From contig NIVC01003073.1 of assembly GCA_002269645.1 (NCBI GenBank), positions 5,236 to 69,235 of the forward strand: a stretch of 64,000 bases of DNA, read 5' to 3'. Shown here piece by piece: positions 1 to 20,260 of the stretch (the first letter of the stretch is position 1; each line of letters begins with the position of its first letter). The notes under the pieces are model-generated. The model did not search any database. It was not told where the DNA came from and worked only from the letters and a program-made list of their open reading frames with translations. The translations under genes and the position numbers were made by a program. The stretch comes from Macrostomum lignano (lineage: Eukaryota).

Positions 1-1117
1 TCGATTTGTCGGTCGACTTCGCCGCGCCAATGTGGCGGTAGCCGTCGCGGAGGCTGTTTTACGGCTGTTCCGGTGGTCTCAATTTCATGCTGCACGATGT
101 CCGTCGTCCCGAGGCGCGCTGTACTCTCTGCGAAAACATCTGCGTATCGATTCACCAATCTTAGGAAACTCGCTTTGTCTGCCCCCGTGAGCTGCTTGGA
201 GCCGTGCTGGTTCAGTGCCGCCTCTGGGTCCCATGGATCGCAGCTGGGTCGTAAAACCGACGCTTGCTCTTCGATGCTGGCTACCAGAACCTCTTGAGCC
301 GGATCTGATGGTCGAAACCAGCCGATGACAGCTCCCTTCCGCAGCCGCAGCTCGGAGTCCGTGACATTCGCGAAGTGAACTGGTAGGGTGTTGCCCTGCT
401 GGATGAGGCAGACGCTCCTGGCTAGCATTGGTCTCTCATCGCTCTTCAGTTTTTCGTCTGGCTCGGCGACGCCGAGCACTCCGGAATTCTGTGTCGCTGT
501 TCTCCGAATCCTGGCTGAGACGGTCCGTTCGTGATTGGCCGGAATGATCAAGTTTTCGTTCAGGTACAACCGGCAGACGACTGGTTTGTGCTTGGTCTCT
601 CGGATTGGCACACGTGAACCGTTCACGCGGAAAACTCCTCCGGCGAAATCGATTTGGCACCGGTGGCGGCGTAAGAAGTCGGTGCCTAGCAACAGTTCGT
701 AGCCGACCCCTTGGACCACCGCAATTGGCGTCTGTAAAGTTTCTGATCCGAACTGTAGGGGAAGCGACGCGCATCCTAACACATTCATGGAGTTCCGTTC
801 GCTGAGATCAGGTGGGTTTCCGAAGGGCTGAGTTCAACTCGAACCGACTTGCTCAACTGCCGCCAGGTCCTCTCGTTCACCAGCGACATGACCGAGCCCG
901 AATCCAACAGACACGGCAACTCAATCTCGCCAATTTTTACCGACACGTAGATTGACACGGGATTAAAAGCTGTTGCAGGTTGATCTCTATCTCTTGAGCA
1001 GTCCGCCGGACATCCTGCTGCACGTCGCTCCGGGGCTGCATCTTCGTCTCGGGTTGGGGCCTCTACTGTCTCGGCGGAACTCCCTCGCCCCTGCGGAAGT
1101 TCCCCTTGCCGTTTCCC
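1..1117 (-). CDS. pol: pol polyprotein, partial (protease plus start of RT), in the -1 frame relative to gag; one 1-nt frameshift near 789
   Basis: Manual translation gives CLLDSGSVMSLV (protease DSG) and LISANGTP, then a frameshift, then MNVLG, LLLGTDFL, LVNRYADVF, LGTTDIVQHEIET and KQPPRRLPPHWRGEVDRQI (typical Gypsy pre-RT motifs). Each segment is open apart from the single shift. Confidence 0.9.
1056..1117 (-). promoter_or_regulatory. -1 programmed ribosomal frameshift signal: G GGA AAC slippery site plus H-type pseudoknot
   Basis: Heptamer GGGAAAC at 1117-1111 in the gag frame, then a 7-nt spacer. Stem 1 is GGAACTTCC (1103-1095) / GGGAGTTCC (1084-1076), 9 bp. Loop GGGGC (1091-1087) can pair with GCCCC (1060-1056). 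A -1 shift leads into the protease frame. Confidence 0.8.
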
Positions 1118-2043
1118 TGTTGCTGACGGGTTGGGCAGTTAGTCGCGATGTGCCCTGGCTTGTTGCAGAAGAAGCAGCGAATTCCTCCCGTTCGTCGAGG
1201 CTTCTGATGGTCGCCTTCGTCGGAGTCGGTCGGTCGAGCTGCGGCGCTGCTATGCGGTTCCGCTCTCAGCGACTCGAGCTGAACCACTTTGCCTTGAAGC
1301 TGCCTCACCAGTTTCTTCAACTCCTCGAGCTCTTTGTCCTTTTCTTGGGAGTAGGCTCCATCCTCCCGAGGCACAGATTCCGCCGCGCCGCTCACCACGA
1401 AGACTCCTCGGTAGCCGCTGCCAGTTGCTCCAGCCGATCTCGGTCCCTTCGCCGCCTTGGACGCCGCCTCGAGCTGCCTCACCGCGCGTTGTGCTGCCAC
1501 CAGACCTTCGGGCTGCTGCAGGTAGAGCTTCTCTCGCTGGAGGTCGGAGAGTCTCACCCCTTGCATGAAGCGATCCTTCGCGAGGTCGTCCTGCAGCTCG
1601 GCAGTTGCCGCCGGGTAGGCACAGCGCACCAGTTCAAGGAGAGCATCTGCGTAGGCCTCCAACGACTCGCCATCCTTCTGATCTCGGGTTTTTAGCTCGA
1701 CCTTGCTGTCCTGCTCTGTCCGGTACCGGGAGAAGCGAGCCTCCAACCGGGCGGTGAATCCCTCGTAGTCCAGCGGATCCACAGGATCGTCGGGTCCCGG
1801 CAGGTTCAGATTATCGACCGCAGCGTACGCCGTAGCGAGATCCAGCATGCTCATCAAGTGCTCGCGGCGATGCTCCTCGTCAATCTCGGCGGAGTCGCAA
1901 TAAGCGTTGAAAGAGCGCAGCCAGAGTCGAAAATTCATGCTTGACGTGTACTTCACGGGCTTCGGGAGTCTCGGTGGCTGGGCTGGTCCATCCGCTCGCA
2001 GACGCTCGGCTAGCAGCCGAATCAGTTCGTCCACATTCGCCAT
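1063..2043 (-). CDS. gag: Gag (capsid-like region plus CX2CX4HX4C zinc knuckle), 326 aa
   Basis: ATG lies 25 nt after the PBS. Contains the CFFCNKPGHIATNC knuckle and FRLWLRSFNAYC and LAKDRFMQG segments resembling retrotransposon Gag. Confidence 0.95.
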   Translation of the reverse strand: MANVDELIRLLAERLRADGPAQPPRLPKPVKYTSSMNFRLWLRSFNAYCDSAEIDEEHRREHLMSMLDLATAYAAVDNLNLPGPDDPVDPLDYEGFTARLEARFSRYRTEQDSKVELKTRDQKDGESLEAYADALLELVRCAYPAATAELQDDLAKDRFMQGVRLSDLQREKLYLQQPEGLVAAQRAVRQLEAASKAAKGPRSAGATGSGYRGVFVVSGAAESVPREDGAYSQEKDKELEELKKLVRQLQGKVVQLESLRAEPHSSAAARPTDSDEGDHQKPRRTGGIRCFFCNKPGHIATNCPTRQQQGNGKGNFRRGEGVPPRQ

Positions 2044-2067: not shown

Positions 2068-2085
2068 GTCCCTGTTCGGGCGCCA
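2068..2085 (-). promoter_or_regulatory. Primer binding site complementary to the tRNA-Lys(UUU) 3' end
   Basis: TGGCGCCCGAACAGGGAC, 18 nt, one base after the LTR terminal CA. This is the known tRNA-Lys3 PBS sequence. Confidence 0.95.
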
Positions 2086-2253
2086 ATGTTGTATCCCCCT
2101 TCCTCGCTGGCACGGCCGGGTTGGGTGACGGGTAGCGGTGTCGGGGTTCGGGTACTGGACTGCCCAGGGCTTACGAGCTCGATCGGCGACCCCGAGGCGT
2201 ACGGACACTTCGGGGGAGGTCAAGGTTGAGAAGTCGAGAGAGAGGGGAGGGGC

Positions 2254-2557
2254 GGCTGTGGGCGGGCGGCCACTCGACAGCCTGGTGAGTCAAGGAAGAG
2301 AGAGAGGGCTGCGGGCGGTCGGCCACTCGACAGCCTGGTGAGTCAAGGAAAAGAGAGAGGGCTGTGGGCGGGCGGCCACTCGACAGCCTGGTGAGTCAAG
2401 GAAGAGAGAGAGGGCTGCGGGCGGTCGGCCACTCGACAGCCTGGTGAGTCAAGGAAAAGAGAGAGGGCTGTGGGCGGGCGGCCACTCGACAGCCTGGTGA
2501 GTCAAGGAAGAGAGAGAGGGCTGCGGGCGGTCGGCCACTCGACAGCCTGGTGAGTCA
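2254..2557 (-). repeat. Six tandem copies of a ~53-55 bp unit in the LTR U5/leader region
   Basis: CCACTCGACAGCCTGGTGAGTCA is repeated six times, with GTGAGT starting at 2285, 2338, 2391, 2444, about 2497 and about 2550. Confidence 0.9.
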
Positions 2558-2680
2558 GACTGAGGAGAGAGTGAGAGAGAGAGAGATCAGGAGAGCGACC
2601 CCGAGGAACACAGGCAATTGTCTCGACAGCTTACCGGGCCGGGTCGATTATAGCACTCATACACGGGAAGGCCGATCGAT

Positions 2681-2723
2681 TGCAATAAATTGAGTCTTCG
2701 CAGTAAGAGACCGTCTTTACGGC
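2681..2723 (-). other. Spliced-leader exon-like sequence embedded in the LTR
   Basis: (G)CCGTAAAGACGGTCTCTTACTGCGAAGACTCAATTTATTGCA matches the Macrostomum lignano SL as I recall it (ending ...ATTTATTGCATG), lacking only the final TG. Confidence 0.85.
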
Positions 2724-3421
2724 TGATCGCTGGTCACGTTCGTTTATTTATCGCGGTGGGCGCAAATGGGCGCAGGCACGGTGAGAAAAGGGGCGGGGTC
2801 TGAGCGTCGCCTTAAATAACGAGTAAAAAGGGGCAGGGGCGCAAACAAGGGGGGGGGAGAAAGGGCTTAAACAATGGAGCTGATTGACAGCTGATTGGCT
2901 GCGGCGAGGGAGGGTGGAAGCGCGCACGGCCAGGGAGAGGGAGAGAGAGCAGAGGCCCAGCCAATCAGCACGGCTAGCCAAAGGGCTAAACAGCCAAGGC
3001 GAGAGAGAGAGAGAAAGAGAGCAGAGGCTCAGCCAAAGGGCTCATAGCTCCAGACTGGCTTGAGCCGGGGGGGGGGGGGGTAACAATAATCAACTACCAA
3101 AGTCAACAACTATCAAAGTGCACTTGCACCAGGGGAGCACTGTGACACAGGTCACAACACATGTACAGTGGGAATTGGGTGATTTAGTTTTGTGTGCAGG
3201 GGACAGGAAACTCAGTCAGACCACGGACTGTATGAAAACTGATTGAGTATCTCGGGACAAAGAAGCAACAGAAAAAGACCGAGCGTCAACTATTCAATCA
3301 TCATTTCTCTCTTTTCAAGCTGCTTCAAAAATGAAAAATCGAACGTGTAAAAACATAACTTGTTTCCGCACAAGACACCCACTAGCTCCATCTAAAAATG
3401 TGTTGAAATTCATGTTTCAGG

Positions 3422-3831: not shown

Positions 3832-5042
3832 CCAGTGGGAACAAATATTCTATAGAATTCTATAGAACTACAAAGCGATTCCATAGAAAAATCGTGTCTT
3901 TCCGTGAACCCAACTGAACCCCGACAATTTATCCCAGGAAGTCAGGATCAGGATTGGGAACGCATCTAAACTCTAAACAATAAAGAAAAGAAAATTATAT
4001 GCTAGCTAAATTTTATCCATGTTAAGTTGCTTAAGTTTCTCACTATGGATGCTTGCAGAAGGGCTGTTGCGGTACTTAGTATATCATTTGGTTCCGCAGC
4101 TAGTCACAGGTAATTCAGCCCATTCCACGGACTCGTGCACAAACACACACAGATACGTAGCTTGTACGCAGGCAGGCAGGCACCAACTCAACAAGTGTGT
4201 ACATCTGCCCCTAATTTTTTTGAGTCAGGCATTGTCATTATTAAATAGGTTCTTTCAACGGCAAGAGACTCAGGGAGAGAGAATCAAGAAGAGATAATCT
4301 GGGAAAAATAATCATGAAAAGAGACTCAGGGAGAGAGAATCAAGAAGAGATAATCTGGGAAAAATAATCATGAAAAGAGACTCAGGGAGAGAGAATCAAG
4401 AAGAGATAATCTGGGAAAAATAATCATGAAAAGAGACTCAGGGAGAGAGAATCAAGAAGAGATAATCTGGGAAAAATAATCATGAAAAGAGACTCAGGGA
4501 GAGAGAATCAAGAAGAGATAATCTGGGAAAAATAATCATGAAAAGAGACTCAGGGAGAGAGAATCAAGAAGAGATAATCTGGGAAAAATAATCATGAAAA
4601 GAGACTCAGGGAGAGAGAATCAAGAAGAGATAATCTGGGAAAAATAATCATGAAAAGAGACTCAGGGAGAGAGAATCAAGAAGAGATAATCTGGGAAAAA
4701 TAATCATGAAAAGAGACTCAGGGAGAGAGAATCAAGAAGCTAGAATTAGAAGCAATTAGAATCCGGATATTTAAGCGTTTTTTCGTGTAGTCGACGAAAG
4801 CTTTCAAAACAAGAAATCGATTTTTTATCACGACAAGTCAGCCGCCCCGAGCGACCTTAAGGCGACCGTGAGGCGACCGAATGAAAGTGCATAAGAGCTT
4901 AGGAAAAACATCCAAAGTACCATTTTTTGCTGAAAATGCTCTCTAGATTGCAATTAAAGTACTCTAAGAACAAACTCCAAAAATATTTGGGCGATCGTTT
5001 GGGCGGCGCCGCCCGCAGTCGCCCCCAGTTTTTTCCCACTGG
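3832..5042. mobile_element. Possible non-autonomous TIR DNA element (short CCAGTGGGAA termini) containing the 56-bp satellite
   Basis: CCAGTGGGAA at 3832 and TTCCCACTGG at 5033, with AA flanks near both ends. The TIR is only 10 bp. Confidence 0.25.
4263..4738. repeat. 56-bp tandem repeat, about 8.5 near-identical copies
   Basis: Unit AAGAGACTCAGGGAGAGAGAATCAAGAAGAGATAATCTGGGAAAAATAATCATGAA. Confidence 0.95.
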
Positions 5043-6825
5043 GAATGTACATATACAATTTGAGATAGATAGGGATTAATGCAAGTACATGGGATTAATT
5101 TACATATGCTAGTACATATAGAAATATGCTATGTATATGTATATCACGTTTAGGATAGCGTTTTCATATACTACTTACTTCATTTTGAGATAGTAGTATA
5201 GTTTGCGTTTTTTGCGTCAAAACATCTGAAAACCCAGCAGTTTCTGCGCATTACGTAGTCGCGCGGTATTTATATACCCACAGAATCAGTGCAGTAAAAC
5301 AACTGGTAGACCTCTTGTCACACATATACGGTAACCAGTGAAGCATGAGTTTCCAGTGAATTAATTTCGCACGTTAGTATGATCTCAGAAGTCATTAGTA
5401 ATTAATACTAATTAGCGTAATATAAACGATGAATTCTAGGAGCCCTACCACACTTAGAACTAGGCCCCTAGTTTTCTTTTCAATTTCAGATGGGTGGGCA
5501 GCAGAGAAAGCAAAGCACGACAGTCGGGTGAACGATAGTTACCAAATTCTTGTGTATTTACATGCAGTTTATTTTGCCGTGCAAGAAATGATGCATTGCT
5601 TAATTTTTTGAGTTTATTAAAAACTTCAGTGTACGCAGGCCTAGCGGCTTAAATCGATCAATCAATTCGTCTGCAAAGTAACTTACAAGCTTACAGGTGA
5701 TCGATGTAGCTTTATTTCGTTATCGGGATCATGATTTTTAGACTAGATGTGATGTGGATAACTGCATTACATGTATATCGCGATTGCACTTGCATGCCAC
5801 TCGGTCACACCCGCTGCATAACTGCAGAGCATACCTACAGCACAGTCCTGTGATATACATGTATTACCATTCAATCTCTATGGATACTGGATAATAATGA
5901 ATCACAGAGGTCCCAATTATCATAGTAAATGCACTATCGATAAGACAATTATATGTTCTTTAACCTCCAGCTCGATTTATAAGAAAATCGAATGTAGCGT
6001 CCTACTACTCATGTACTCCATCAAGAACTCCGCGACCCATTCCGCGGCGGCGGCTTCAGCATGCTGGCAATCGACAAAACGCCGAGTACACGCCTGTCCC
6101 CGTCAGTGGGGTGCCTGCAGTGTCAGCGGCAGTACGACTGGTCTCCAGCTGGAGTCGCCGACAGCGCAACAGTTGTCCATGGATAGCTGTTACACACAAA
6201 CATTGCTAGTCAACCAGAAGCTGCCGGTATGTAGATGCTGTAACTACAAGTTTTCTCTGTCTGTCAACTGACCCGCGACATCTTACAGAAAAACAACGAT
6301 TTGCTTCGCAGTTGACATGTAGGACTAGCTAAAGACCTAACAAAAAGGAAGATAAGTTGAAAGGGTCGCGCGAATTAGCACTAGAGAGCCAGCAGAGAAA
6401 GAGCAGAGTGCTTGAATTCATGCCGATCGGCCCTCTGCATCGGCATCGCCTGTCGTGACTTAACACTTTGCTTTCGAGCTTTCGAGTGAGTGAGTGAGTG
6501 AAAGTCTTGACAACGCGGAATTCAAGGAGGGAGCGGCGCAACAGCCTTTAGGAGAGAAAATTCGTGTGAGGGAGTAGAGATGGAAATGGAAAGGGGGAGG
6601 CTGAAGACGCTGTTTGGAGCCCCGGGAAGAAAATTAAATTTCGTCTCCGGTCCGCTTTTATTAGATTCTGACCGGCTCGGTTCGGCTGCATCGCCTCGCC
6701 TCTCAGGGCTTCGGTCGTAGGTCATTTGCGCCCTCCATTTTCTAGTGTTTTATTTTTAGTGTATTCAGCAGCGCTTCCGGCTACTCTGCCATCTTCATCA
6801 GTCTCTGTCGATACCAGTGCTTTGC

Positions 6826-6990
6826 TGTCTGTCTGTCTGTCTGCTTGTTTGTCTATCTGCCTGTCTGTCCGTCTGTCTGTCTGTCTGTCTGCCTGTTTGT
6901 CTGTCTGTCTGTCTGTAGTGTCTGTCTGTTTGTCAGAGTGTCTGTCTGTCTGTCCGTCTGTCTGTCTGTCCGTCTGTCTGTCTGTCTGTG

Positions 6991-7021
<31 letters not shown>

Positions 7022-7022
7022 G

Positions 7023-7095
<73 letters not shown>

Positions 7096-7141
7096 GTGTC
7101 TGTGTCTATCTTAGTGTCTCTCTGTCCATGTCTGTCTGTCT
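6826..7141. repeat. (CTGT)n microsatellite
   Basis: Direct inspection. Confidence 0.95.
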
Positions 7142-8007
7142 TCTTCTTATCCCAGATCTGCTAGAATTCTAGCCTTTGATCGATTCACTTCTAGTATTCC
7201 AAGGCGCAACCCAAAACACACTGATGTTACATCAGCACGGGCTGTTCAACATCTATTCAAAACCCTTTTGACAATTATCGAACCAATTTCCTTTTCACCA
7301 AATGACCTCTCAGCACTCGGCTCCTCTCTTTCTGGCCTTGTCCCCACAGGCCGGCAGTCTATCATACTCGCTACTGCAAATCGAGTTTCCATCACTCTAC
7401 AGCCAGCCTGGCCCAGCCAGCCAGAATACTAAAGAAAGCAATTCAGCCGACGTTGCTTGCTTTTTTGCTGCTGTTGCCGTTGTCTGTGTTCAGTTTGTAA
7501 CCCGGCGTGACGCAATCAAACCCTGCAATTTACAGGCTTAATTGCGCGCTGTCGCTGCAGTTACGCTTTTTGCTATGCGTACTTCGGGTGCCGTCCATCT
7601 ACCTTCATCTCAGCAGCAAAATGTAAAGGGTAATTGAAAGCTTGCATGCGAGCCAGCTGAGTGTGTTTTTGTGACCTCTATACGAGTTATAGGGCTGGAA
7701 CTGGCCTGCGCAATGGACTGACTAACTTTTTTGGGTAGGTAGCTTCCCCTGTGACACGAATAGTTGCTGCTAAAGGCGTGAAGTCAGCACTGCTAAGCAC
7801 TAGTGCGCGTTCATGTTGGCGCATATGAGAGCACCACCTGCCATGCTGAACGTTAATTTATGCGCGCATATCTGCACGAACCGCTTTTTCGATTAGTTCT
7901 ACCTAGATTTCAAATACTCTCGTATATGCTAGTACTTGCAGGTCTGCTTCTCGCCAGACCAAGGTCAAACCCAATGTGCTAACAAGCTGTAGCACTGACA
8001 GTCAGTC

Positions 8008-8108
8008 ATCTCTCTTCTCCCTCTCTCTCGCTCTCGCTCTCTTCTCTCTCGCTCTCTTCCTCTCTCTTCTCCCTCTCTCTCGCTCTCGCTCTCTTCTCTC
8101 TCGCTCTC

Positions 8109-8152
<44 letters not shown>

Positions 8153-8755
8153 CTCCCTCTCTTCTCTCTCTCTCTTCTCTCTCGCTCCTTTCTCCCTCTC
8201 TCTCTCTTCTCTCTCTTCTCTCTCGCTCTCTTCTCCCTCTCCCTCTTCTCTCTCGCTCTCTTCTCCCTCTCTCTCTCTCTCTTCTCCCTCCCTCTCTTCT
8301 CTCTCTCTCTTCTCTCTCGCTCCTTTTTCCCCCTCTCTCTCTTCTCTCTCTTCTCTCTCGCTCTCTTCTCCCTCTCCCTCTTCTCTCTCGCTCTCTTCTC
8401 CCTCTCTCTCTCTCTCTTCTCCCTCCCTCTCTTCTCTCTCTCTCTTCTCTCTCGCTCCTTTCTCCCTCTCTCTCTCTTCTCTCTCGCTCCTTTCTCCCTC
8501 TCTCTCTCTTCTCTCTCTTCTCTCTCGCTCTCTTCTCTCTCTCGCTCTCTTCTCTCTCTCGCTCCTTTCTCCCTCTCTCTCTCTCTTCTCTCTCTTCTCT
8601 CTCGCTCTCTTCTCTCTCTCGCTCTCTTCTCTCTCTCGCTCCTTTCTCCCTCTCTCTCTCTTCTCTCTCTTCTCTCTCTCGCTCTCTTCTCGCTCTCGCT
8701 CTCGCTCTCTTCTCGCCCTCGCTCTCTTCTCCCTCTCGCTCTCTTCTCCCTTTCT
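8008..8755. repeat. CT-rich compound microsatellite
   Basis: Mosaic of (CT)n, CTCG and CTT units. Confidence 0.95.
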
Positions 8756-9410
8756 TCTCCCTATTTCCCTCCTCTTCCCTTTCATTCCCCCATAGCCGGC
8801 TCCTTTACCCCTTCTCTCTATCGGCATAGCAGACCCAGACAGGCCCGCAACCAAACAGAGGGACACCGCCACCCCTGGGTCCTCAAAAATTTCAATCTAG
8901 CAATCTACTAGAGCAATCGGGTCTACAGCGAGTGCCAGCAGTTTATCTCTGCTGCAGCATCCTCCATCAGACTGAAGTGGCTCCTAGCGCTTGCCCGGCT
9001 CACAGCCATAAAATATTTATCGCCCTGACCTCAGAAGCCCGCATGTGGATGAGTGCAGCAGCTCATCCTGCATGACTCAAACCAGCTGCATATTCATCCA
9101 GCCTTGTGCTTCTGGTTGGCATTAAAATTTCAATAAACTGTGCTGCCATTTCCTCATTAAATTGACTGAATGACACTTTCACATTATTAAAGGGTATTGG
9201 CCTGAGCTCTGCTCCACCCCGTGAGAGTCTCGTGGGCTTTGAAAATTTCAAATTTAAAAAATCCAACAAATAATCCGATTGACGATGTGTGGAGCTCTGC
9301 AGCCTCTGCTGGCATTTCATTTTTTGAGGAACTGCAGGGCTCATCTGGCCTGTGCGCCCTCCGTGACTTATTCTTGACTTCCCTTCTGTCTTTCCGTTCA
9401 CTCTTCTCTG

Positions 9411-10122
9411 TGTCGTGTCCTGTCCTGTCCTGTCCTGTCCTATATTTCTCTTTGTCCTGTCCTGTCCTGTCCTGTCCTGTCCTGTCCTGTCCTTTCCTGT
9501 CTTGTATTTCTCTCTGTCCTGTCCTGTCCTGTCCTGTCCTGTCCTATATTTCTCTTTGTCATGTCCTGTCCTGTCCTGTCCTGTCCTGTCCTGTCCTGTC
9601 CTTTCCTGTCTTGTATTTCTCTCTGTCCTGTCCTGTCCTGTCCTGTCCTGTCCTGTCCTATATTTCTCTTTGTCATGTCCTGTCCTGTCATATCCTGTCC
9701 TGTTCTATATTTCTCTTTGTCATGTCCTGTCCTGTCCTGTCCTGTCCTGTCCTTTCCTGTCTTGTATTTCTCTCTGTCCTGTCCTGTCCTGTCCTGTCCT
9801 GTCCTGTCCTGTCCTTTCCTGTCTTGTATTTCTCTCTGTCCTGTCCTGTCCTGTCCTGTCCTGTCCTGTCCTGTCCTGTCCTGTCCTGTCCTGTCCTGTC
9901 CTGTCCTGTCTTGTATTTCTCTCTGTCCTGTCCTGTCCTGTCCTGTCCTGTCCTGTCCTGTCCTGTCCTGTCTTGTATTTCTCTCTGTCCTGTCCTGTCC
10001 TGTCCTGTCCTGTCCTGTCCTGTCCTGTCCTGTCCTGTCCTGTCTTGTATTTCTCTCTGTCCTGTCCTGTCCTGTCCTGTCCTGTCCTGTCCTGTCCTGT
10101 CCTGTCCTGTCATATCCTGTCC
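9411..10122. repeat. (CCTGT)n pentamer array punctuated by CTTGTATTTCTCTCTGT-type spacers
   Basis: Direct inspection. Confidence 0.95.
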
Positions 10123-10599
10123 TCTCCTTTCCTCGTCCAACCATCCTCGTCTTCTACAACTCAGACAAGATACAAGCGGACAGACTAAGAAAGCTAAGAG
10201 GACTGAAGCAGTGCAGCTGCTAATCCAATTGAGCGCCGATAACTGCATGCCAGAACATTATTGGCTGCAATCAGCGGCTCTGCACTCCTGGCAACACTGA
10301 TGGCCGGCCCACTTGACCCATGCTAAACTGGCACTCCATGTCCAACTGCTTTTACCAGTGCACTTGGCAACCAAGCCGAGCTGTCAAGAGGAGGTGAAAC
10401 TTGATAGCTAGCTAAGGGACAGGCGGACTGTCTGGGGATGAGAGGAGGCTGGGCCTGGCTTCACATCTTATCTGACTAGCTATCTGCCCAGCAACCATTG
10501 GTCTTCTGTTGACTGCGTACTGGGTGGAACCTGCGTTCAATGGTGAAGTTTTAAAAAAAATTTTTGCAGATTTCCAATCAGGACACAGTCACCCCATTT

Positions 10600-10980
10600 A
10601 TATATCCCAATCTCTCCCTTGATTTATCTCAATCTCACTCTTCATCTAACCCAATCTCACCCTTCATCCAAACCCTATCTCACCGTTCATCTAAACACTA
10701 TCTCACCCTTCATCTAAACCCTATCTCACCCTTCATCTAAACCCTATCTCACCTCTCTTTTAACCCAATCTCACCCTTCATCTTTCCTAATCTCACCCTT
10801 TATCTTTCCTAATCTCATCTCCCATCTATCCCAATCTCACCCTTCATCTTTCCCATTCTCATCTCCCATCTATCCCAATCTCGCTCTCAAGCTATTCCAG
10901 ACTCACACTTTGTCTAACTCAATCTCACCCTTCATCTATTCTAGTCTCACCCTCTGCTAAATCTCTAATCTCACCATTCA
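10600..10980. repeat. Degenerate ~23-bp pyrimidine-rich minisatellite (ATCTCACCCTTCATCT core)
   Basis: Recurrent core motif. Confidence 0.75.
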
Positions 10981-11686
10981 AAAATCCCCTCCCCTCGAAG
11001 ATGCTTCTCCCAGCTGCAAGCTACAGGACAACCTCAACCTCAGTTTTTCCCTAATTTGCATTTATTCCCCAGCAGACCCTCCTGGGGAGCAGACGCGGAG
11101 CAGACGCGGGACCAGAACAGCAATTGGGAGCCGAGACGCATGAGGGGATTTTAATCCTCATGGGAGCTGCCATGCAGCCGGCAGCAACAGCAGTATCTTG
11201 ATCTTCACCCCCTTTGCCTTTCCTCCCAAACTACCGGCTAACCGCCGCCATCATATAACCGTGGCCGTTGGTTGCTAAGGCAGGGCGGCTACCGCCGCCA
11301 TCATATAGCCGTGGCCGTTGGTTGCTGAGACAGCGAGCGGCCCACAAGAAAACTCGATTAGCAAAATTCTGGGCAGCTCTTAACTGCCTGTGTGGCCTTG
11401 AATGTCGAGGAAGGGGAGACGGTTAAAAAGAACGTCGAGTACATTTCTTATCGCTTAATTCTGATGATGAACTGGGGGAGGCTGTGGGGCTTTTCATAAT
11501 TTTATGGAGGCCTGCAGCTGCATCTGAAAGCTCGCCCCAGCTTTTTCTAAGAATTCCCAGGGCGTAAATGCTGGCTGCTTAGCTGCGATTCCTTGGCGTG
11601 GCTTTTGTACTTTTCTGGCAGGGGCGGCTCTGAATGTCTGTATGTGAGATCTACTTGTATATATTCTGGTTTTTTCCCGGTTAACA

Positions 11687-12420
11687 TGGCGCCCCCGATG
11701 CTCACCAGTTGGCGCCCGCGATGCTCACCAGTTGGCGCCCCCGATGCTCACCAGTTGCTGGCGCCCCCGATGCTCACCAGTTGGCGCCCGCGATTCTCAC
11801 CAGTTGCTGGCGCCCCCGATGCTCACCAGTTGCTGGCGCCCCCGATGCTCACCAGTTGGCGCCCCCGATGCTCACCAGTTGGCGCCCGCGATGCTCACCA
11901 GTTGCTGGCGCCCCCGATGCTCACCAGTTGGCGCCCGCGATTCTCACCAGTTGCTGGCGCCCCCGATGCTCACCAGTTGGCGCCCGCGATGCTCATCAGT
12001 TGCTGGCGCCCCCGATGCTCACCAGTTGGCGCCCCTAATGCTCACCAGTTGGCGCCCCCAATGCTCACCAGTTGGCGCCCCCGATGCTCACCAGTTGGCG
12101 CCCGCGATGCTCACCAGTTGGCGCCCCCCATTGCTCACCAGTTGGCGCCCTCGATGCTCACCAGTTGGCGCCCCCCATTGCTCACCAGTTGGCGCCCCCG
12201 ATGCTCACCAGTTGGCGCCCCTAATGCTCACCAGTTGGCGCCCCCGATGCTCACCAGTTGGCGCCCCCGATGCTCACCAGTTGGCGCCCCCAATGCTCAC
12301 CAGTTGGCGCCCCCGATGCTTACCTTGGCGCCTCCCCGTAATCATCTTGGCGCCTCCCCATAATCATCTTTGCTCCTCCCCATAGTCATCTTGGCGCCCC
12401 TGATGTTTACTTTGGCGCCC
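11687..12420. repeat. 23-bp GC-rich minisatellite GGCGCCCCCGATGCTCACCAGTT (some 26-bp variants)
   Basis: Direct inspection; degenerates at the right end. Confidence 0.95.
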
Positions 12421-13050: not shown

Positions 13051-13714
13051 GTAAATTAACGGGGTAGAGGAACGCGGGTACCAGGAGTCAAGAGGCAGGG
13101 CTACAAGACAAAGCCTTTTAAAGTCTGAACCAGCGGAGTGAAGGAGCGCCATAAAGGAAAGATTTCTAGCGGAAATCTGTGCCCAAATAAAGTCAACAAT
13201 CAATGCTTACAGAGCCACCCCAATGCAGCTCAGGCATCACAGGCGTTCAATGGTTGTGCAAACATTTCGTATTGCAAATCTGGAGAGCGCTACATGCAAG
13301 TACAGATCGTTTGCAGCACAGGCCATTTCATAAGCAGAGCGCCTGGAACTGATCCGTCCGCCAGTGTGATGGATGGCAACAATGCCGTGGGAAATTATTA
13401 ATAACAATGTATGAGAAACATGGACTCCAATTCAAATTAGCAGCACAGTGTTTTGCTCAGACTTATCTGCATCAAATCACTGGTACTGTTGACGCATTGG
13501 GGATGTGCTGTAGTCTGCTTCCCTTCAAGCAGAAGCCGTCACCTGCTCTTCATCAGATTGTGGTTGACTGGGTGCAAAACTTGGCATTGGTTTTTGCACT
13601 GCGCTTTTGGGGCGTTCTAGATCGGAAAAGCTTGGAATCAGGAATTGGATATGGTTTCTGCAGGTTTACCAGATGATCCTGGAACAATTTGAAGGTTGAA
13701 AGAACAAGATAGAG

Positions 13715-14180
13715 GATCCTGAAGGTTTCGATAAGAAGCTAGAGGGTCCTGAAGGCTTTGGTAAGAAGCTAGAGGGTCCTGAAGATTTCGATAAGAAGCT
13801 AAAGGATGCTGAAGGCTTTGAGAAGAAGTTAAAGGATGCTGAAGGCTTTGGTAAGAAGCTAGAGGATGCTGAAGGTTTTGATCAGAAGCTAGAGAATCCT
13901 GAAGGTTTTGATTAGAAGCTAGAGAATCCTGAAGGTTTTGATCAGAAGCTAGAGAATCCTGAAGGTTTTGATCAGAAGCTAGAGAATCCTGAAGGTTTTG
14001 ATTAGAAGCTAGAGAATCCTGAAGGTTTTGATTAGAAGCTAGAGAATCCTGAAGGTTTTGGTCAGAAGCTAGAGAATCCTGAAGGTTTTGATCAGAAGCT
14101 AGAGAATCCTGAAGGTTTTGATTAGAAGCTAGAGGGTCCCAAATGTTTTAGTAGCTGTTAAGAAGCTAGAGAATCCTGAA
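13715..14180. repeat. 30-bp minisatellite AGAAGCTAGAGAATCCTGAAGGTTTTGATC
   Basis: About 15 copies, more diverged at the left. Confidence 0.9.
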
Positions 14181-14703
14181 TATTCCAAAAGTCAAACTGA
14201 TAAATATTAACACGCTACCAGAAACATCACTAATGCTCATTTAGGTCTCAGTCCATCTAGAACCGATCCAACTGCTTATCTAGCGCTAGGTGGTCTTCAA
14301 ATTAAAATTGCACGCATTGAACCCTACACAAGCTCAAAAACCTCGAGCAGCATGTGAGTTAACAGGGCCAACGTCCCAGTGCAGCGTTCATTTTTTGATG
14401 GATGATTTTTTCCCGCTGAAAATCTGCTCTGAAAATTTCCTGGTAAAACACGAAAGAACTGGCAGGCCGGAGGGGGTGCTGCGAGGGAGAGATGCGGAGA
14501 GGAGAATAAGGAGAGCAGAGTCCACTCAGACAGCACGGGAGAGGCTGCAGTGAAGACAGCGACCGCTGGGTAAAACATGTGAATCAGGCTGATAGCCAAA
14601 TCTCTTTGAAACTGACTGTCAAGACTTCATTTCCTGCGACTGTCTGCTTCCAGGGGCTGCATGATCGGAATGAATGGCGACTGGCAAAGGACAGAGTGAA
14701 ACG

Positions 14704-14752
<49 letters not shown>

Positions 14753-14775
14753 GGCAAGCAGACAGACAGATATAT

Positions 14776-14860
<85 letters not shown>

Positions 14861-14861
14861 C

Positions 14862-14944
<83 letters not shown>

Positions 14945-14949
14945 CAGAC

Positions 14950-15012
<63 letters not shown>

Positions 15013-15013
15013 C

Positions 15014-15100
<87 letters not shown>

Positions 15101-15118
15101 CAGATAGATATAGTTAGA
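14704..15118. repeat. (GATA)n/(GACA)n microsatellite
   Basis: Direct inspection. Confidence 0.95.
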
Positions 15119-15648
15119 CAGGCATAGGAAATTTGAGCAGGCCGCGGATGTGGCAGAGCCGTGAGCCCCGCACATTCCTCACTGCCCGGGATGGGGGCAG
15201 AGCTGCAGTGCGCAGCCGGGCAGGGCAGGCTGAGGCTGCACCGCCCGGTTCCGGCGCCATGCGCCCCCACCCCCCCTGCCCTGCCTGATTGGCAAGCGGC
15301 CGTCCAATGGCCGAGGCAGCAGGCAGGAGAGGCTGAAATTCCTGCCTTCAGTGCGCTGTCGCCTCAGCGCCCTTCGCCTTCTCCTTCCCCCCCCCCCCAG
15401 CCCGGCGGCAGGGCATTAAAGTGTGAGCAAGCCGAGGTGCGCTGCCCCCTCAGTAGGAAACACTGCGGCAGCTTTTCGATTTCCTTCCACCCAGCCCCAC
15501 CCCCGAGAGTAAGCCGAGAGCTCACGGAACTCTTTGAGCTCGGGTACCGGCAGGCAGCTTGGCCTCCTCAACCTGAGAGCCGCTCCAACCCCCATGCTTG
15601 GGGCTCCCTGCCGGCCTTCAAAACTGTTGAGATGACCGCGGCGTCGCG

Positions 15649-17319
15649 ATGAGCATCTTCTCAAGGAAGTCGCGCGCTGCGGAGCCTCCGCCTCAGCCGC
15701 ACGGCCGGGCGGTCACGCAGCCGCTGGCCATCCGGGTCGGCCCGGCCAGCCGCCCGCAGTCCGGCCACATCGGCGGCTACTCGGCCACCATCGCGGCTGC
15801 CGAATCCTGGCGGCCCGGCTGCGACGCCGGCGGCTCCGTGGCGCTGCGCAGGCGGCCGCAGCTGGTGACCCCCTGCCCCGCGCATGGCAGCTACGGCCTC
15901 AGCCCCAGGAAGCCGCCGCCACCGGCTGGCGTGGCGCCGCGGGCCGACTTCTACGGCAGCTACTTTTACCCCGGCCAGGACGACCGGCGGAGCAGCGCCG
16001 GCTCCCAGCGGTTCGCCACGGTGGCCAACCGGCTGTCCTTCGCTTTCGAGGTCGGCTCGCTGCCGCAGCTCGTCACCAACCTGCCGGCGGACGCCGCCCA
16101 GCCGCCCGACCATCCGATCCCGACGCCGCCGCCGACGCCGCCGGTCCGGCCGGCTGCCGATCATCAGTCGCGGGCGTCGCAGCTGTCCGAGACTCCGATT
16201 AAGAACAGCTGGAGCCGGGAGCAGCAGGAGCAACAGCAGCAGCAGCAGCAGCAACAGAGCGTCCCCGGAGCCATCGGCAGCCTGACCTCAATCGTGCAGT
16301 TCATGCGCCGCACCAACAGCACCTGCAGCGCGGACTCGCAGTTCAAAGTCACCCTGCGCAAGAGCCGCAGCCGGAGCCGGCGGTCACGTGACCTGCCCAG
16401 GCTGCGCTTCCTGCCGGCGCTGTCGCGGTCGCCGAGCTCCTCCGGGCGCGGCTACGAGGTGATCGACAGCCACCCGACCGTGCTGTACCGGCCGCGCTAC
16501 TTCGCCCAGCGCCGCTCCCTTGTCGAAGGGCTGGAGAAGCTGCACCTGTTCGGCGAGCTGGACCCCGAGGACGGTCTGGATCTCCTGGACGATCCCAGCG
16601 AACGGCGCGGCAGCCGGCGGCGTCGGCAACGTCGGGACTCGTGTCCGAGCAAACTGCTGGGCGGCGACGGCGCCGACGACCTTGGCCGGAGCGCCTCCGA
16701 CCACGGCAACGCCAGCCAGCCGCGGCGCATCGGCGAGGTGCGCCAGGAGGCCAGCCTGCGGCGCCGCTGCCGCACCTTCTCGCGGCCGCGGGACGGCCCG
16801 CCGCCGAAGAGCCCCCTGCCGGTGCCGCGCCGGGACCGCAGCCAGCACGCCTTCTACTTCTTCCACGTGCGCACGTGGAACCTGGCGCAGACCGAGTCGT
16901 TTCTGTTCGACACCATCGTGACGCTGCTGGCCAGGCGGCACTCCTGCACCCTGCGGCTGCTGCCACAGGAGGAGGCGCAGGACCTGCCGGACGGACTGCG
17001 CCGCGTGGAGGTGGCCGGCCCGAGCCTGAAGGACATCAAGCGGTTTCTGTACTACCTGACCACCAGCGAGGAGACGGTGAGCCTGCAGCGCCAGATCCAG
17101 GAGCGGTACACCCTGAGCCGCGGCCTGACCGGCCACTTGGGAGGCGTCGACGTCAACGGAGGAGGAACTGGAGGAGGAGGACCTTCGCCGGCCTTCAGCG
17201 CGCGGCTGTGGCGAGCGAACTCGGTGTCGGCGACAACCGAAGCGGCTACGGATGTCCGGCTGAGGCAGGCGGCGGGGTCTGCGGGCGGATCGCGGAGTCG
17301 GGTGAACGGCTGCGACTGA
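15649..17319 (+). CDS. Uncharacterised intronless 556-aa protein, mostly low-complexity with a probable globular domain at about aa 395-490
   Basis: Long non-repetitive ORF with ATG start and strong GC3 bias like the conserved genes in this window. No family recognised. Confidence 0.75.
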   Translation: MSIFSRKSRAAEPPPQPHGRAVTQPLAIRVGPASRPQSGHIGGYSATIAAAESWRPGCDAGGSVALRRRPQLVTPCPAHGSYGLSPRKPPPPAGVAPRADFYGSYFYPGQDDRRSSAGSQRFATVANRLSFAFEVGSLPQLVTNLPADAAQPPDHPIPTPPPTPPVRPAADHQSRASQLSETPIKNSWSREQQEQQQQQQQQQSVPGAIGSLTSIVQFMRRTNSTCSADSQFKVTLRKSRSRSRRSRDLPRLRFLPALSRSPSSSGRGYEVIDSHPTVLYRPRYFAQRRSLVEGLEKLHLFGELDPEDGLDLLDDPSERRGSRRRRQRRDSCPSKLLGGDGADDLGRSASDHGNASQPRRIGEVRQEASLRRRCRTFSRPRDGPPPKSPLPVPRRDRSQHAFYFFHVRTWNLAQTESFLFDTIVTLLARRHSCTLRLLPQEEAQDLPDGLRRVEVAGPSLKDIKRFLYYLTTSEETVSLQRQIQERYTLSRGLTGHLGGVDVNGGGTGGGGPSPAFSARLWRANSVSATTEAATDVRLRQAAGSAGGSRSRVNGCD

Positions 17320-19479: not shown

Positions 19480-20260
19480 TCCTGTCTCCCCTCTCTTCTA
19501 TCTTTCCTGTCTCCCCTCTCTTCTATCTTTCCTGTCTCCCCTCTCTTCTATCTTTCCTGTCTCCCCTCTCTTCTCTCCTGTCTCCCCTCTCTTCTATCTT
19601 TCCTGTCTCCCCTCTCTTCTATCTTTCCTGTCTCCCCTCTCTTCTATCTTTCCTGTCTCCCCTCTCTTCCATCTTTCCTGTCTCCCCTCTCTTCTATCTT
19701 TCCTGTCTCCCCTCTCTTCTATCTTTCCTGTCTCCCCTCTCTTCCATCTTTCCTGTCTCCCCTCTCTTCTATCTTTCCTGTCTCCCCTCTCTTCTATCTT
19801 TCCTGTCTCCCCTCTCTTCTATCTTTCCTGTCTCCACTCTCTTCTCTCCTGTCTCCCCTCTCTTCTATCTTTCCTGTCTCCCCTCTCTTCTATCTTTCCT
19901 GTCTCCCCTCTCTTCTATCTTTCCTGTCTCCCCTCTCTTCTATCTTTCCTGTCTCCCCTCTCTTCTATCTTTCCTGTCTCCCCTCTCTTCTATCTTTCCT
20001 GTCTCCCCTCTCTTCTCTCCTGTCTCCCCTCTCTTCTATCTTTCCTGTCTCCCCTCTCTTCTATCTTTCCTGTCTCCCCTCTCTTCTCTCCTGTCTCCCC
20101 TCTCTTCTATCTTTCCTGTCTCCCCTCTCTTCTATCTTTCCTGTCTCCCCTCTCTTCTATCTTTCCTGTCTCCACTCTCTTCTATCTTTCCTGTCTCCCC
20201 TCTCTTCTATCTTTCCTGTCTCCACTCTCTTCTCTCCTGTCTCCCCTCTCTTCTCCATCT
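19480..20260. repeat. 25-bp pyrimidine minisatellite TCTCCCCTCTCTTCTATCTTTCCTG
   Basis: Direct inspection. Confidence 0.95.

What the first reader, a model, noticed from the sequence alone, without database searches (positions are those of the whole stretch)
2681..2750. Host spliced-leader exon built into a Gypsy LTR at the predicted transcription start (R region)
Seen: on the element's sense strand the LTR reads TAAATAAA (2750-2743), then about 19 nt, then GCCGTAAAGACGGTCTCTTACTGCGAAGACTCAATTTATTGCA, then ATCG. Established (from memory): the Macrostomum SL has this sequence and, like other flatworm SLs, ends in AUG. The LTR copy lacks exactly the terminal TG, so the upstream AUG is removed. 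There is no donor directly after it and no Sm site, so it is not an SL RNA gene. Inference: TAAATAAA starts about 27 nt upstream of the SL start and could act as TATA box in the 5' LTR and as AAUAAA in the 3' LTR. Element RNA would then begin with the SL and R would consist of SL sequence. This could be mimicry of trans-spliced mRNAs (translation, export, escape from silencing), or it could keep trans-spliced element RNAs competent for first-strand transfer. I know of no description of this in a flatworm retrotransposon.
Basis: partly seen in the sequence, partly recalled or inferred. Interest (0 to 1): 0.9.

Follow-up and report, generated by a model that had tools for sequence, protein, structure and literature searches.

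The report
Spliced-leader fossil inside a flatworm LTR
A copy of the Macrostomum spliced-leader exon really is embedded in the long terminal repeat of a Ty3/gypsy retrotransposon. It lies at the predicted poly(A) site (R/U5 border) and looks like a scar from reverse transcription of a trans-spliced element RNA, not a built-in transcription start.

Summary
Window 2723-2681 (minus strand) equals nt 1-43 of the 45-nt Macrostomum SL exon. It lies inside the 1073-nt 5' LTR (3159-2087) of a Ty3/gypsy element of M. lignano, which has a tRNA-Lys-type PBS, a CCHC gag, PR-RT-RH-INT and a J-domain ORF3. It is not an SL RNA gene, and the element did not insert into one.

The match starts exactly at SL RNA +1, which points to RNA-mediated capture. 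The SL follows the LTR's only AATAAA by 19 nt. It is flanked by a 5-nt direct repeat (CGATC), and the left copy is preceded by AG. Removing the insert restores a textbook poly(A) site.

Best reading: an element RNA was trans-spliced just before its poly(A) site, and an aberrant first-strand transfer fixed the SL at the R/U5 border. A TATTTAAGG box, placed as in a related element (a weak match), puts the transcription start about 65 nt upstream of the SL.

A second genomic copy lacks a 360-nt LTR block that includes the SL. The 3' LTR of this copy is cut by the contig end 80 nt before the site. SL fragments in flatworm LTR and LINE elements were already reported in outline in 2025.

The parts
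2087..3159 (-). 5' LTR (1073 nt), TGTTGTGACC...GATACAACA
   Evidence: Aligned with the 3' LTR of the same copy (L011 15677-16023) and with both LTRs of a second copy, L010 (A1 and A2). The 3' LTRs are preceded by the polypurine tract AGGGGGGAGGG. GC is 62% inside against 42% in the 500 nt upstream.
2810..2818 (-). TATTTAAGG, the likely TATA box. GATTGG (2966-2961), CCAATCAG (2898-2891) and CAATCAG (2886-2880) lie upstream of it.
   Evidence: Motif coordinates. The distant relative L001 has the same order and spacing: GATTGG, CCAATCAG, about 65 nt, then ATTTAAGG-N5-CTCAG. The BLAST match is weak (E 0.26).
2743..2750 (-). TAAATAAA, which contains the only AATAAA of the LTR (2748-2743).
   Evidence: A scan for 15 poly(A) hexamer variants over 3159-2087 found only this site.
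2725..2731 (-). AG followed by CGATC: the proposed old trans-splice acceptor (CCAG|CGATC) and the last bases of R. Predicted cleavage is after C2725, 18 nt past AATAAA. A2724 may be a remnant of the poly(A) tail.
   Evidence: Read directly from the sequence. CGATC is the left copy of the 5-nt direct repeat.
2681..2723 (-). SL block: nt 1-43 of the 45-nt Macrostomum SL exon, 43/43 identical
2674..2680 (-). AT (where the SL would have TG), then the right copy of CGATC: the start of the old trans-spliced exon and of U5
   Evidence: A shared 5-mer in such flanks occurs at 1.4% of positions in the non-tandem part of the LTR.
2654..2664 (-). GTGTATGAGTG, a GU-rich element that would lie 9 nt past the cleavage site if the insert were removed
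   Evidence: Read from the sequence; inference.
2629..2660 (-). Short uORF (ATG at 2660, 9 codons) ending in the 5' splice-site-like GGTAAGC (2635-2629)
   Evidence: GGTAAGC or GGTGAGC also follows the poly(A) hexamer in the LTRs of related families L012 and L014.
2587..2946 (-). 360-nt block present in this copy but absent from both LTRs of copy L010. Its edges lie in CT-rich tracts.
   Evidence: A1. The first ~143 nt of the block are also in the 3' LTR of the window copy (A2).
2189..2610 (-). 53-nt tandem repeats in U5; the copy number differs between LTRs
2068..2085 (-). Primer binding site TGGCGCCCGAACAGGGAC (tRNA-Lys type), 1 nt after the LTR end
   Evidence: The same PBS is found in relatives L001 and L002.
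1063..2043 (-). gag ORF (326 aa) with a CCHC zinc knuckle
1..1040 (-). Start of pol (protease with LLDSGS, start of RT), with one frameshift near 790. It continues beyond the window start.
   Evidence: The rest (RT, RNase H, integrase, J-domain ORF3) was seen in L011 and L010.

Best explanation
The window is M. lignano assembly Mlig_3_7, contig NIVC01003073.1. The SL block is a retro-captured copy of the host SL exon, carried inside the LTR of a Ty3/gypsy element at the R/U5 border.

Proposed history (inferred):
1. The ancestral LTR read ...TATTTAAGG...AATAAA-CGAACGTGACCAG-CGATC^GGCCTTCCC-GTGTATGAGTG..., with ^ marking the poly(A) site.
2. An element transcript was SL trans-spliced at CCAG|CGATC, 5 nt before the position of the poly(A) site. 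This replaced R with the SL.
3. Reverse transcription from the tRNA-Lys-type PBS ran to the capped 5' end of the SL.
4. The strong-stop cDNA had no R homology. It jumped onto the 3' end of a genomic RNA (...CCAGCGATC-A(n)).
5. The resulting LTR was U3-R-A-SL-(AT)CGATC-U5, and plus-strand synthesis copied it to both ends.

Present state (inferred): transcription starts about 30 nt after TATTTAAGG, near 2790, and polyadenylation occurs at about 2725. The SL is then a passenger at about +65 to +107 of the genomic RNA, as the first part of U5. It has no demonstrated function.
For: Shown:
- SL identity 43/43.
- Similarity to a real SL RNA gene begins exactly at RNA +1, with none upstream. It ends 2 nt before the exon end, with no intron sequence. 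That is the signature of a cDNA copy of the exon.
- The SL lies inside the LTR, 436 nt from its start and 596 nt before the PBS.
- The first ~143 nt of the surrounding 360-nt block are in both LTRs of this copy, so at least that part of the block passed through reverse transcription.
- There is only one AATAAA in the LTR, ending 19 nt before the SL.
- A CGATC direct repeat flanks the SL (1.4% background), and its left copy is preceded by AG.
- Removing the insert restores AATAAA, 18 nt, the cleavage site, 9 nt, then a GU-rich element (read).
- The CCAAT/ATTTAAGG promoter layout is shared with the SL-less relative L001, although that match is weak (E 0.26). Two other M. lignano families show a TATA-like box followed by a poly(A) hexamer and then a GGTRAGC donor.

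Prior literature reads SL fragments in flatworm LTR and LINE elements the same way (PMC12582326).
Against: - SL nt 44-45 read AT, not TG, so the SL/exon junction is not the exact trans-splice product. Two later changes or an assembly error must be assumed.
- Only one A lies between R and the SL, where a poly(A) remnant might be expected.
- The proposed acceptor has no polypyrimidine tract.
- The start and poly(A) sites are predicted from consensus motifs only.
- Nucleotide alignment between families is marginal (z about 2.2), so the layout argument rests on motif order.
- Only one SL-bearing LTR was seen. The 3' LTR of the same copy is cut by the contig end 80 nt before the site.
- The other copy (L010) lacks the whole 360-nt block.
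Confidence: 0.5

Rival explanations
1. First reader's model. TAAATAAA acts as the TATA box in the 5' LTR and as AAUAAA in the 3' LTR. Transcription starts at the first base of the SL, so the element RNA begins with SL sequence and mimics trans-spliced host mRNAs. R is made of SL sequence.
For: GATAAATA is a 7/8 match to TATAWAWR and lies about 27 nt before the SL. The junction TCA|GCC resembles an initiator (read). Retroviruses with a poly(A) signal just upstream of the cap site and a very short R are known (established knowledge, from memory).
Against: With the only AATAAA at 2748-2743, cleavage within 10-30 nt leaves an R of at most about 10 nt, not the whole SL. No poly(A) hexamer lies within or after the SL. 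A second, equally good TATA-like box with CCAAT boxes matches relatives that lack the SL in position, and it predicts a start about 65 nt upstream. The CGATC repeat and the AG are left unexplained. A pol II start would give an m7G cap rather than the SL RNA's TMG cap, so mimicry would be incomplete (established knowledge).
Confidence: 0.15
2. DNA-level insertion. A cDNA of the free SL exon or of an SL-bearing RNA was inserted into an LTR at a staggered break, for example by LINE machinery or end-joining. This produced a 5-bp target-site duplication (CGATC). The position next to the AATAAA is a coincidence. The insertion may be private to this 5' LTR.
For: A 5-nt direct repeat flanks the insert. 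Only one SL-bearing LTR was observed. The 3' LTR site cannot be seen. The SL is absent from copy L010 and from three other gypsy loci.
Against: There is no poly(A) tail or other mark of target-primed insertion. The model does not explain why the insert sits exactly at the predicted cleavage site (about a 2% chance for a 20-nt target in about 1 kb), nor the AG before the left repeat. The two LTRs of this copy otherwise differ almost only in homopolymer and CT-run lengths.
Confidence: 0.2
3. Copy-choice onto a co-packaged free SL RNA. During minus-strand synthesis, reverse transcriptase switched from the element's U5 onto the SL RNA at exon nt 43, ran to its 5' end, and then transferred to R.
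For: The match stops at nt 43, not at the exon end (nt 45), as expected for a switch inside the SL RNA rather than a splice junction. Small nuclear RNAs are known to be packaged and copied by retroviruses (established knowledge, from memory).
Against: It needs two non-homologous switches. No microhomology is visible at nt 43. It does not explain the AG-CGATC arrangement.
Confidence: 0.1
4. The element inserted into or next to an SL RNA gene, as the SL-targeting non-LTR elements NeSL-1, SLACS and CZAR do. The SL would then be interrupted host flank.
For: The SL appears cut 2 nt before its end.
Against: The SL is 436 nt inside the LTR. LTR sequence on its 5' side is shared with three other LTRs that have different flanks. 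The bases upstream of the SL have no similarity to those upstream of a real SL RNA gene. The element is an LTR element with an integrase, not a site-specific non-LTR element.
Confidence: 0.01

Closest known systems
SL fragments associated with LTR and LINE elements in parasitic flatworm genomes (Calvelo et al. 2025, PMC12582326)
   Same: Partial leader sequence with no other SL RNA feature, lying in or next to retrotransposons. [quoted passage not shown]
   Different: That work covers cestodes and trematodes. The loci were only counted (597) and discarded as false SL RNA candidates; their position within the elements was not analysed. Here the host is a free-living macrostomid. The SL is complete at its 5' end and is mapped to the predicted R/U5 border inside the LTR, with a flanking repeat.
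Relic spliced leaders on retrogenes of dinoflagellates (Slamovits and Keeling 2008, as cited in PMC12582326; see also PMC12014239)
   Same: DNA-encoded SL produced by reverse transcription of a trans-spliced RNA and integration.
   Different: [quoted passage not shown] Here the SL is internal to an LTR and would be propagated by the element's own replication.
SL-gene-targeting non-LTR retrotransposons (NeSL-1 of C. elegans; SLACS, CZAR and CRE of trypanosomatids). From memory.
   Same: A retrotransposon sequence physically joined to an SL exon.
   Different: Those elements insert site-specifically into functional SL RNA genes, so the SL is target DNA. Here the SL is part of the element.
Capture of cellular RNA by LTR-element reverse transcriptase through template switching (yeast Ty1 chimeric retrosequences, maize Bs1, oncogene transduction). 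From memory.
   Same: Cellular RNA sequence becomes part of a retroelement through an aberrant strand transfer.
   Different: The captured piece here is the 43-nt trans-spliced leader. It was probably acquired through normal host RNA processing of the element transcript rather than by read-through or co-packaging.

Membership tests
Ty3/gypsy (Metaviridae) LTR retrotransposon | Two direct long terminal repeats with TG...CA termini | tested here: met
   Window 5' LTR 3159-2087 (TGTTG...CAACA). The 3' LTR is in L011 (15677 to the contig end). Both LTRs of the second copy L010 are also seen.
Ty3/gypsy (Metaviridae) LTR retrotransposon | tRNA primer binding site after the 5' LTR and a polypurine tract before the 3' LTR | tested here: met
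   PBS TGGCGCCCGAACAGGGAC at 2085-2068. AGGGGGGAGGG lies directly before both 3' LTRs.
Ty3/gypsy (Metaviridae) LTR retrotransposon | gag with a CCHC knuckle; pol in the order PR-RT-RNase H-integrase | tested here: met
   zf-CCHC in gag. LLDSGS protease motif. RVT_1, RT_RNaseH, Integrase_H2C2 and rve in that order.
Ty3/gypsy (Metaviridae) LTR retrotransposon | Short target-site duplication | tested here: inconclusive
   The window copy cannot be tested because its 3' LTR runs off the contig. The sister copy L010 has a 4-bp duplication, CAAG.
SL RNA gene | SL exon immediately followed by a GT donor | tested here: not met
   The exon stops at nt 43 and is followed by ATCGATC. The real gene has ...GCATG|GTAAGA.
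SL RNA gene | Sm-like site and the three-hairpin fold | tested here: not met
   No Sm-like motif. Fold z = +1.0, against -3.6 with three hairpins for L008. No Rfam hit.
SL-tagged retrocopy (product of reverse transcription of a trans-spliced RNA) | The DNA-encoded SL begins at SL RNA +1, with no gene-flank similarity upstream | tested here: met
   Alignment A3. The 5' end agrees with the SL assembled from transcripts.
SL-tagged retrocopy (product of reverse transcription of a trans-spliced RNA) | The SL/body junction equals a trans-splice junction (full exon ...GCATG joined after an AG acceptor) | tested here: inconclusive
   An AG precedes the left copy of the duplicated CGATC, as the model requires, but SL nt 44-45 read AT instead of TG.
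SL-gene-targeting retrotransposon (NeSL/SLACS/CZAR type) | The element is inserted into an SL RNA gene, so the SL is flanking target DNA | tested here: not met
   The SL is internal to the LTR. The element is an LTR type with an integrase.
   No transcript-end data are available. Motif positions argue against it: the only AATAAA is 62 nt before the SL end, and an ATTTAAGG box that weakly matches a relative (E 0.26) lies about 90 nt upstream of the SL.
   Present in 1 LTR. Cannot be seen in its partner, which is cut by the contig end. Absent, together with a 360-nt block, from both LTRs of the only other copy found.

The most novel reading that the evidence does not exclude
The SL in the LTR is functional. 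Either transcription really starts at its first base, so the element RNA carries a genome-encoded SL at its 5' end and is handled like a trans-spliced host mRNA (translation, export, escape from silencing). Or the internal SL copy modulates trans-splicing or recognition of the element RNA. In both cases the SL-bearing LTR would be the active master form of the family.
Probability: 0.1. Interest if true: 0.8.

Novelty: new member of a known kind. Interest (0 to 1): 0.4.

Why it matters
- If the reconstruction is right, this locus is a well-resolved molecular fossil of two events that are rarely caught. One is SL trans-splicing of an LTR-retrotransposon genomic RNA. The other is a first-strand transfer without R homology that still gave a replicable LTR.
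- It also has a practical side. Genome-encoded SL copies in repeats can be mistaken for SL RNA genes, or can create false trans-splice calls in pipelines that trim the SL and map the rest. The first published M. lignano 'SL RNA' was later reassigned for a similar reason (PMC8629364).
- It does not, on present evidence, show a new strategy of host-mRNA mimicry.

Tried and rejected
- **LTR start.** I first placed it at 3085 (TGTTACCCC) from terminal-inverted-repeat similarity and the GC shift. Alignment with three other LTRs moved it to 3159.
- **More copies.**
  - The exact gag protein is not on record.
  - The gag search gave only relatives at 44% identity.
  - The SL scan and the gag scan of viral contigs found nothing.
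  - The pol searches gave only two near-identical proteins: P0004 (copy L010) and P0023 (the window's own contig).
  - No genome-wide copy count was therefore possible.
- **SL in other elements.** The SL is absent from three other M. lignano gypsy loci and from the rest of the window.
- **Element inserted into an SL RNA gene.** Rejected.
- **uAUG removal under selection.** ATG depletion of the leader is not significant.
- **Backbone homology with L012 and L014.** Nucleotide alignment is only marginal (z 2.2 and 1.5), so only motif order is used.
- **Other checks.** Rfam gave no hit. No tRNA gene in the window could be used to check the PBS.
- **Literature.** Wasik et al. 2015 is not held. No supplements are held as text for the 2025 M. 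lignano LTR catalogue.

Full report
**1.
On the minus strand the window reads TAAATAAA (2750-2743), then 19 nt. GCCGTAAAGACGGTCTCTTACTGCGAAGACTCAATTTATTGCA follows at 2723-2681, and then ATCGATCGG. The 43-mer occurs once in the window and in none of 100 shuffles.
- The published M. lignano SL is the 35-mer CGGTCTCTTACTGCGAAGACTCAATTTATTGCATG (PMC8629364).
- The SL assembled from M. cliftonense transcripts is the 45-mer that begins GCCGTAAAGA (supplement of PMC10468722).
- A scan of metagenome contigs for an SL 24-mer returned five contigs that begin with SL...GCATG followed by coding sequence; these are trans-spliced mRNAs.
- The same scan returned one contig, L008, with a genuine SL RNA gene. 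Its exon is 45 nt and is followed by GTAAGA, a U-rich Sm-like stretch and three hairpins.
- The window block therefore equals exon nt 1-43. The last two bases read AT instead of TG.

**2. What surrounds it.**
- The perfect 18-nt primer binding site TGGCGCCCGAACAGGGAC lies 596 nt downstream on the same strand (2085-2068).
- A 326-aa gag ORF with a CCHC knuckle follows (2043-1063).
- Then come a protease (LLDSGS) and the start of RT, which run off the window start.
- A pol-fragment search returned two near-identical annotated proteins, and their contigs could be fetched.
- L011 is the window's own contig: M. lignano Mlig_3_7, NIVC01003073.1. The window is positions 5236-69235, with 100% identity over 4 kb.
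- L010 is a different insertion of the same family on NIVC01000110.1. It is 99.6% identical over the first 2.45 kb of the window, has different flanks and has a 4-bp target-site duplication, CAAG.
- Together they show the rest of the element: RT, RNase H, integrase, a third ORF with a J domain, the polypurine tract AGGGGGGAGGG and the 3' LTR.
- Alignment of the four LTRs fixes the window's 5' LTR at 3159-2087, TGTTGTGACC...GATACAACA, 1073 nt.
- The SL is therefore inside the LTR, 436 nt from its start.

**3. What it is not.**
- It is not an SL RNA gene. There is no donor after the exon and no Sm-like site. The fold z-score is +1.0, against -3.6 for L008, and there is no Rfam hit.
- The element did not insert into an SL gene. 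LTR sequence continues for 436 nt on the SL's 5' side and is shared by LTRs with other flanks.
- The bases just upstream of the SL are unrelated to those upstream of the real gene.

**4. Signature of capture through RNA.**
Similarity to the SL RNA gene begins exactly at RNA +1 and contains exon sequence only. This is what a cDNA that ran to the 5' end of an SL-bearing RNA looks like.

**5. Where in the LTR it sits.**
- Among the 15 poly(A) hexamer variants scanned, only the AATAAA at 2748-2743 (and the overlapping GATAAA at 2752-2747) is present in the 1073-nt LTR. Cleavage is therefore expected about 10-30 nt later, at or just before the first base of the SL.
- The junction reads AATAAA, CGAACGTGACCAG, CGATC, A, [SL 1-43], AT, CGATC, GGCCTTCCC, GTGTATGAGTG.
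- The pentamer CGATC flanks the SL as a direct repeat. A shared 5-mer in such flanks occurs at 1.4% of positions in the non-tandem part of this LTR (a post hoc observation).
- The left CGATC copy is preceded by AG.
- Deleting A + SL + AT + one CGATC leaves a textbook poly(A) site: AATAAA, 18 nt, the cleavage position, 9 nt, then a GU-rich element.
- TATTTAAGG lies about 90 nt upstream of the SL (2818-2810). CCAATCAG, CAATCAG and GATTGG lie further upstream.
- A distant relative without any SL (L001, 44% gag identity, same PBS) has GATTGG, CCAATCAG and ATTTAAGG-N5-CTCAG in the same order and with similar spacing. The BLAST match is weak (E 0.26).
- Two other M. lignano gypsy families have an ATTTA-type box 100-110 nt before their AGTAAA or AATAAA hexamer. 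A GGTAAGC or GGTGAGC donor-like motif follows shortly after, as in the window at 2635-2629.
- Nucleotide alignment between these families is only marginal, so this argument rests on motif order.

**6. Best explanation (steps inferred).**
1. The ancestral LTR had its start about 30 nt after TATTTAAGG, near 2790, and its poly(A) site after CGATC.
2. One element transcript was SL trans-spliced at CCAG|CGATC, 5 nt before the poly(A) position, and so lost R.
3. Minus-strand strong-stop cDNA made on this RNA ended in the complement of the SL's 5' end and had no R to guide the first jump.
4. It jumped onto the 3' end of a genomic RNA (...CCAGCGATC-A(n)).
5. The product was U3-R-A-SL-CGATC-U5. Because both LTRs are copied from this one junction, it went to both ends.

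This accounts for five things:
- the exact 5' boundary of the SL;
- its position at the poly(A) site;
- the CGATC duplication, since those five bases lie between the acceptor and the cleavage site and so were present on both RNA ends;
- the AG;
- the single extra A.

In the present element the SL would be the first part of U5, at about +65 to +107 of the RNA. R (about 64 nt) would be intact, so the element could still replicate. I see no evidence of a present function.

Misfits:
- AT where the SL has TG.
- Only one A between R and the SL.
- No pyrimidine tract before the proposed acceptor.

Confidence is about 0.5 for this specific path and about 0.85 for capture of the SL exon through RNA in general.

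**7.
- TAAATAAA is also a fair TATA match, and it lies 27 nt before the SL. A start at 2723/2724 therefore cannot be excluded from sequence alone.
- However, R cannot be the SL. With the only AATAAA 62 nt before the SL's end, R would be at most about 10 nt. The idea that an SL-made R rescues trans-spliced RNAs for strand transfer then fails.
- The model leaves the ATTTAAGG/CCAAT layout shared with relatives, the CGATC repeat and the AG unexplained.
- The loss of the SL's AUG is real. Another uAUG lies 20 nt downstream (2660), however, and ATG depletion of the 680-nt leader is not significant (1 observed against about 3 expected).

**8. Is it conserved?**
- Only partly testable. The 3' LTR of the window copy carries the first ~143 nt of the 360-nt block that contains the SL. 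The contig ends 80 nt before the SL site.
- The two LTRs otherwise differ almost only in homopolymer and CT-run lengths.
- The second copy, L010, lacks the block 2946-2587 in both LTRs. The junction lies between two CT-rich tracts.
- The missing block holds the promoter motifs that weakly match L001 and the only poly(A) signal. I therefore read L010 as a deletion derivative, for example from a premature strand transfer between the CT tracts. This polarity is inferred.
- A private DNA-level insertion of an SL cDNA into this 5' LTR, with CGATC as a target-site duplication, remains possible (confidence about 0.2).
- No further copies could be retrieved.
- The SL is absent from three other M. lignano gypsy loci.

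**9. Comparison with what is known.**
- Calvelo et al. 2025 (PMC12582326) discarded 597 candidate 'SL RNA loci' in cestode and trematode genomes. These loci lay in or near LTR and LINE elements and carried only partial leader sequence. [quoted passage not shown]
- The same logic is established for dinoflagellate retrogenes, which that paper cites.
- The 2025 catalogue of 137 M. lignano LTR-retrotransposon families does not mention the SL (PMC12801592).
- The phenomenon is therefore known in outline. The new points here are the host and the resolution: a full 5' end, the placement at the R/U5 border and the flanking repeat.

**10. Verdict.**
This is a new member of a known kind, with interest 0.4. 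The functional mimicry reading keeps a probability of about 0.1. Existing M. lignano 5'-end and 3'-end sequencing data could settle it directly.

Noticed in passing
L010 14031-14948 (same family, outside the window); L001 5865-6659: This gypsy lineage carries a third ORF after integrase with a J domain (DnaJ, HPD motif; Pfam E 1e-12). A 44%-gag-identity relative in a JGI metagenome contig has one too. I know of no description of a J-domain gene in an LTR retrotransposon (from memory).
   Followed up: partly
L010 8106-8701 and ~15554-16042, compared with window 2946-2587: A second insertion of the family (with target-site duplication CAAG) has both LTRs missing the 360-nt block that holds the CCAAT and TATA motifs, the AATAAA and the SL. 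The junction lies between two CT-rich tracts. It looks like the product of a premature strand transfer and would lack its own promoter.
   Followed up: partly
window 2629-2635; L012 7211-7217; L014 ~8427: A consensus 5' splice-site motif (GGTAAGC or GGTGAGC) lies shortly after the poly(A) hexamer, inside U5 and upstream of the PBS, in three M. lignano gypsy families. It may be the major donor for a subgenomic ORF3 mRNA. In the window it overlaps the stop codon of a 9-codon uORF.
   Followed up: no
window 2189-2610: The number of 53-nt tandem repeats in U5 differs between the LTRs of the family: more in the window's 5' LTR than in L010's 5' LTR, and fewest in L010's 3' LTR.
   Followed up: partly
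window ~790 (minus strand); L010 and L011 pol: There is one frameshift in the protease of the window copy and several in the pol of both copies. The two LTRs of the window copy differ almost only in homopolymer and CT-run lengths. Some of this may be residual long-read assembly error. That also bears on the AT-for-TG reading at 2680-2679.
   Followed up: no
window 2068-2085: As far as I recall (from memory), the 18-nt PBS is identical to the classical tRNA-Lys3 primer binding site of lentiviruses. It is shared with relatives L001 and L002. L003 uses a different PBS (TGGCGCCCAATGTGGGGC).
   Followed up: partly
L008 615-725 (JGI contig Ga0302322_100095745); L004-L007 and L009 (Ga0316592): Environmental metagenome or metatranscriptome contigs contain a complete Macrostomum-type SL RNA gene and SL-capped mRNAs. 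Macrostomid DNA and RNA are therefore present in those samples.
   Followed up: partly
window 4150-4820, 6750-7160, 7990-8900, 9330-10300, 10580-10960, 11640-12360, 13600-14210, 14670-15200, 19390-20000: The first 20 kb of the window hold many long tandem-repeat arrays, with periods of 8 to 56 nt. This fits the reported 15% of simple and tandem repeats in the M. lignano genome.
   Followed up: no
L010 7305-8099 and 15921-18392: Long ORFs run up to the 5' LTR and out of the 3' LTR of the L010 copy, and 99.6%-identical repeats flank it (6265-6540 and 18525-18800). That copy is probably nested inside another repeat.
   Followed up: no
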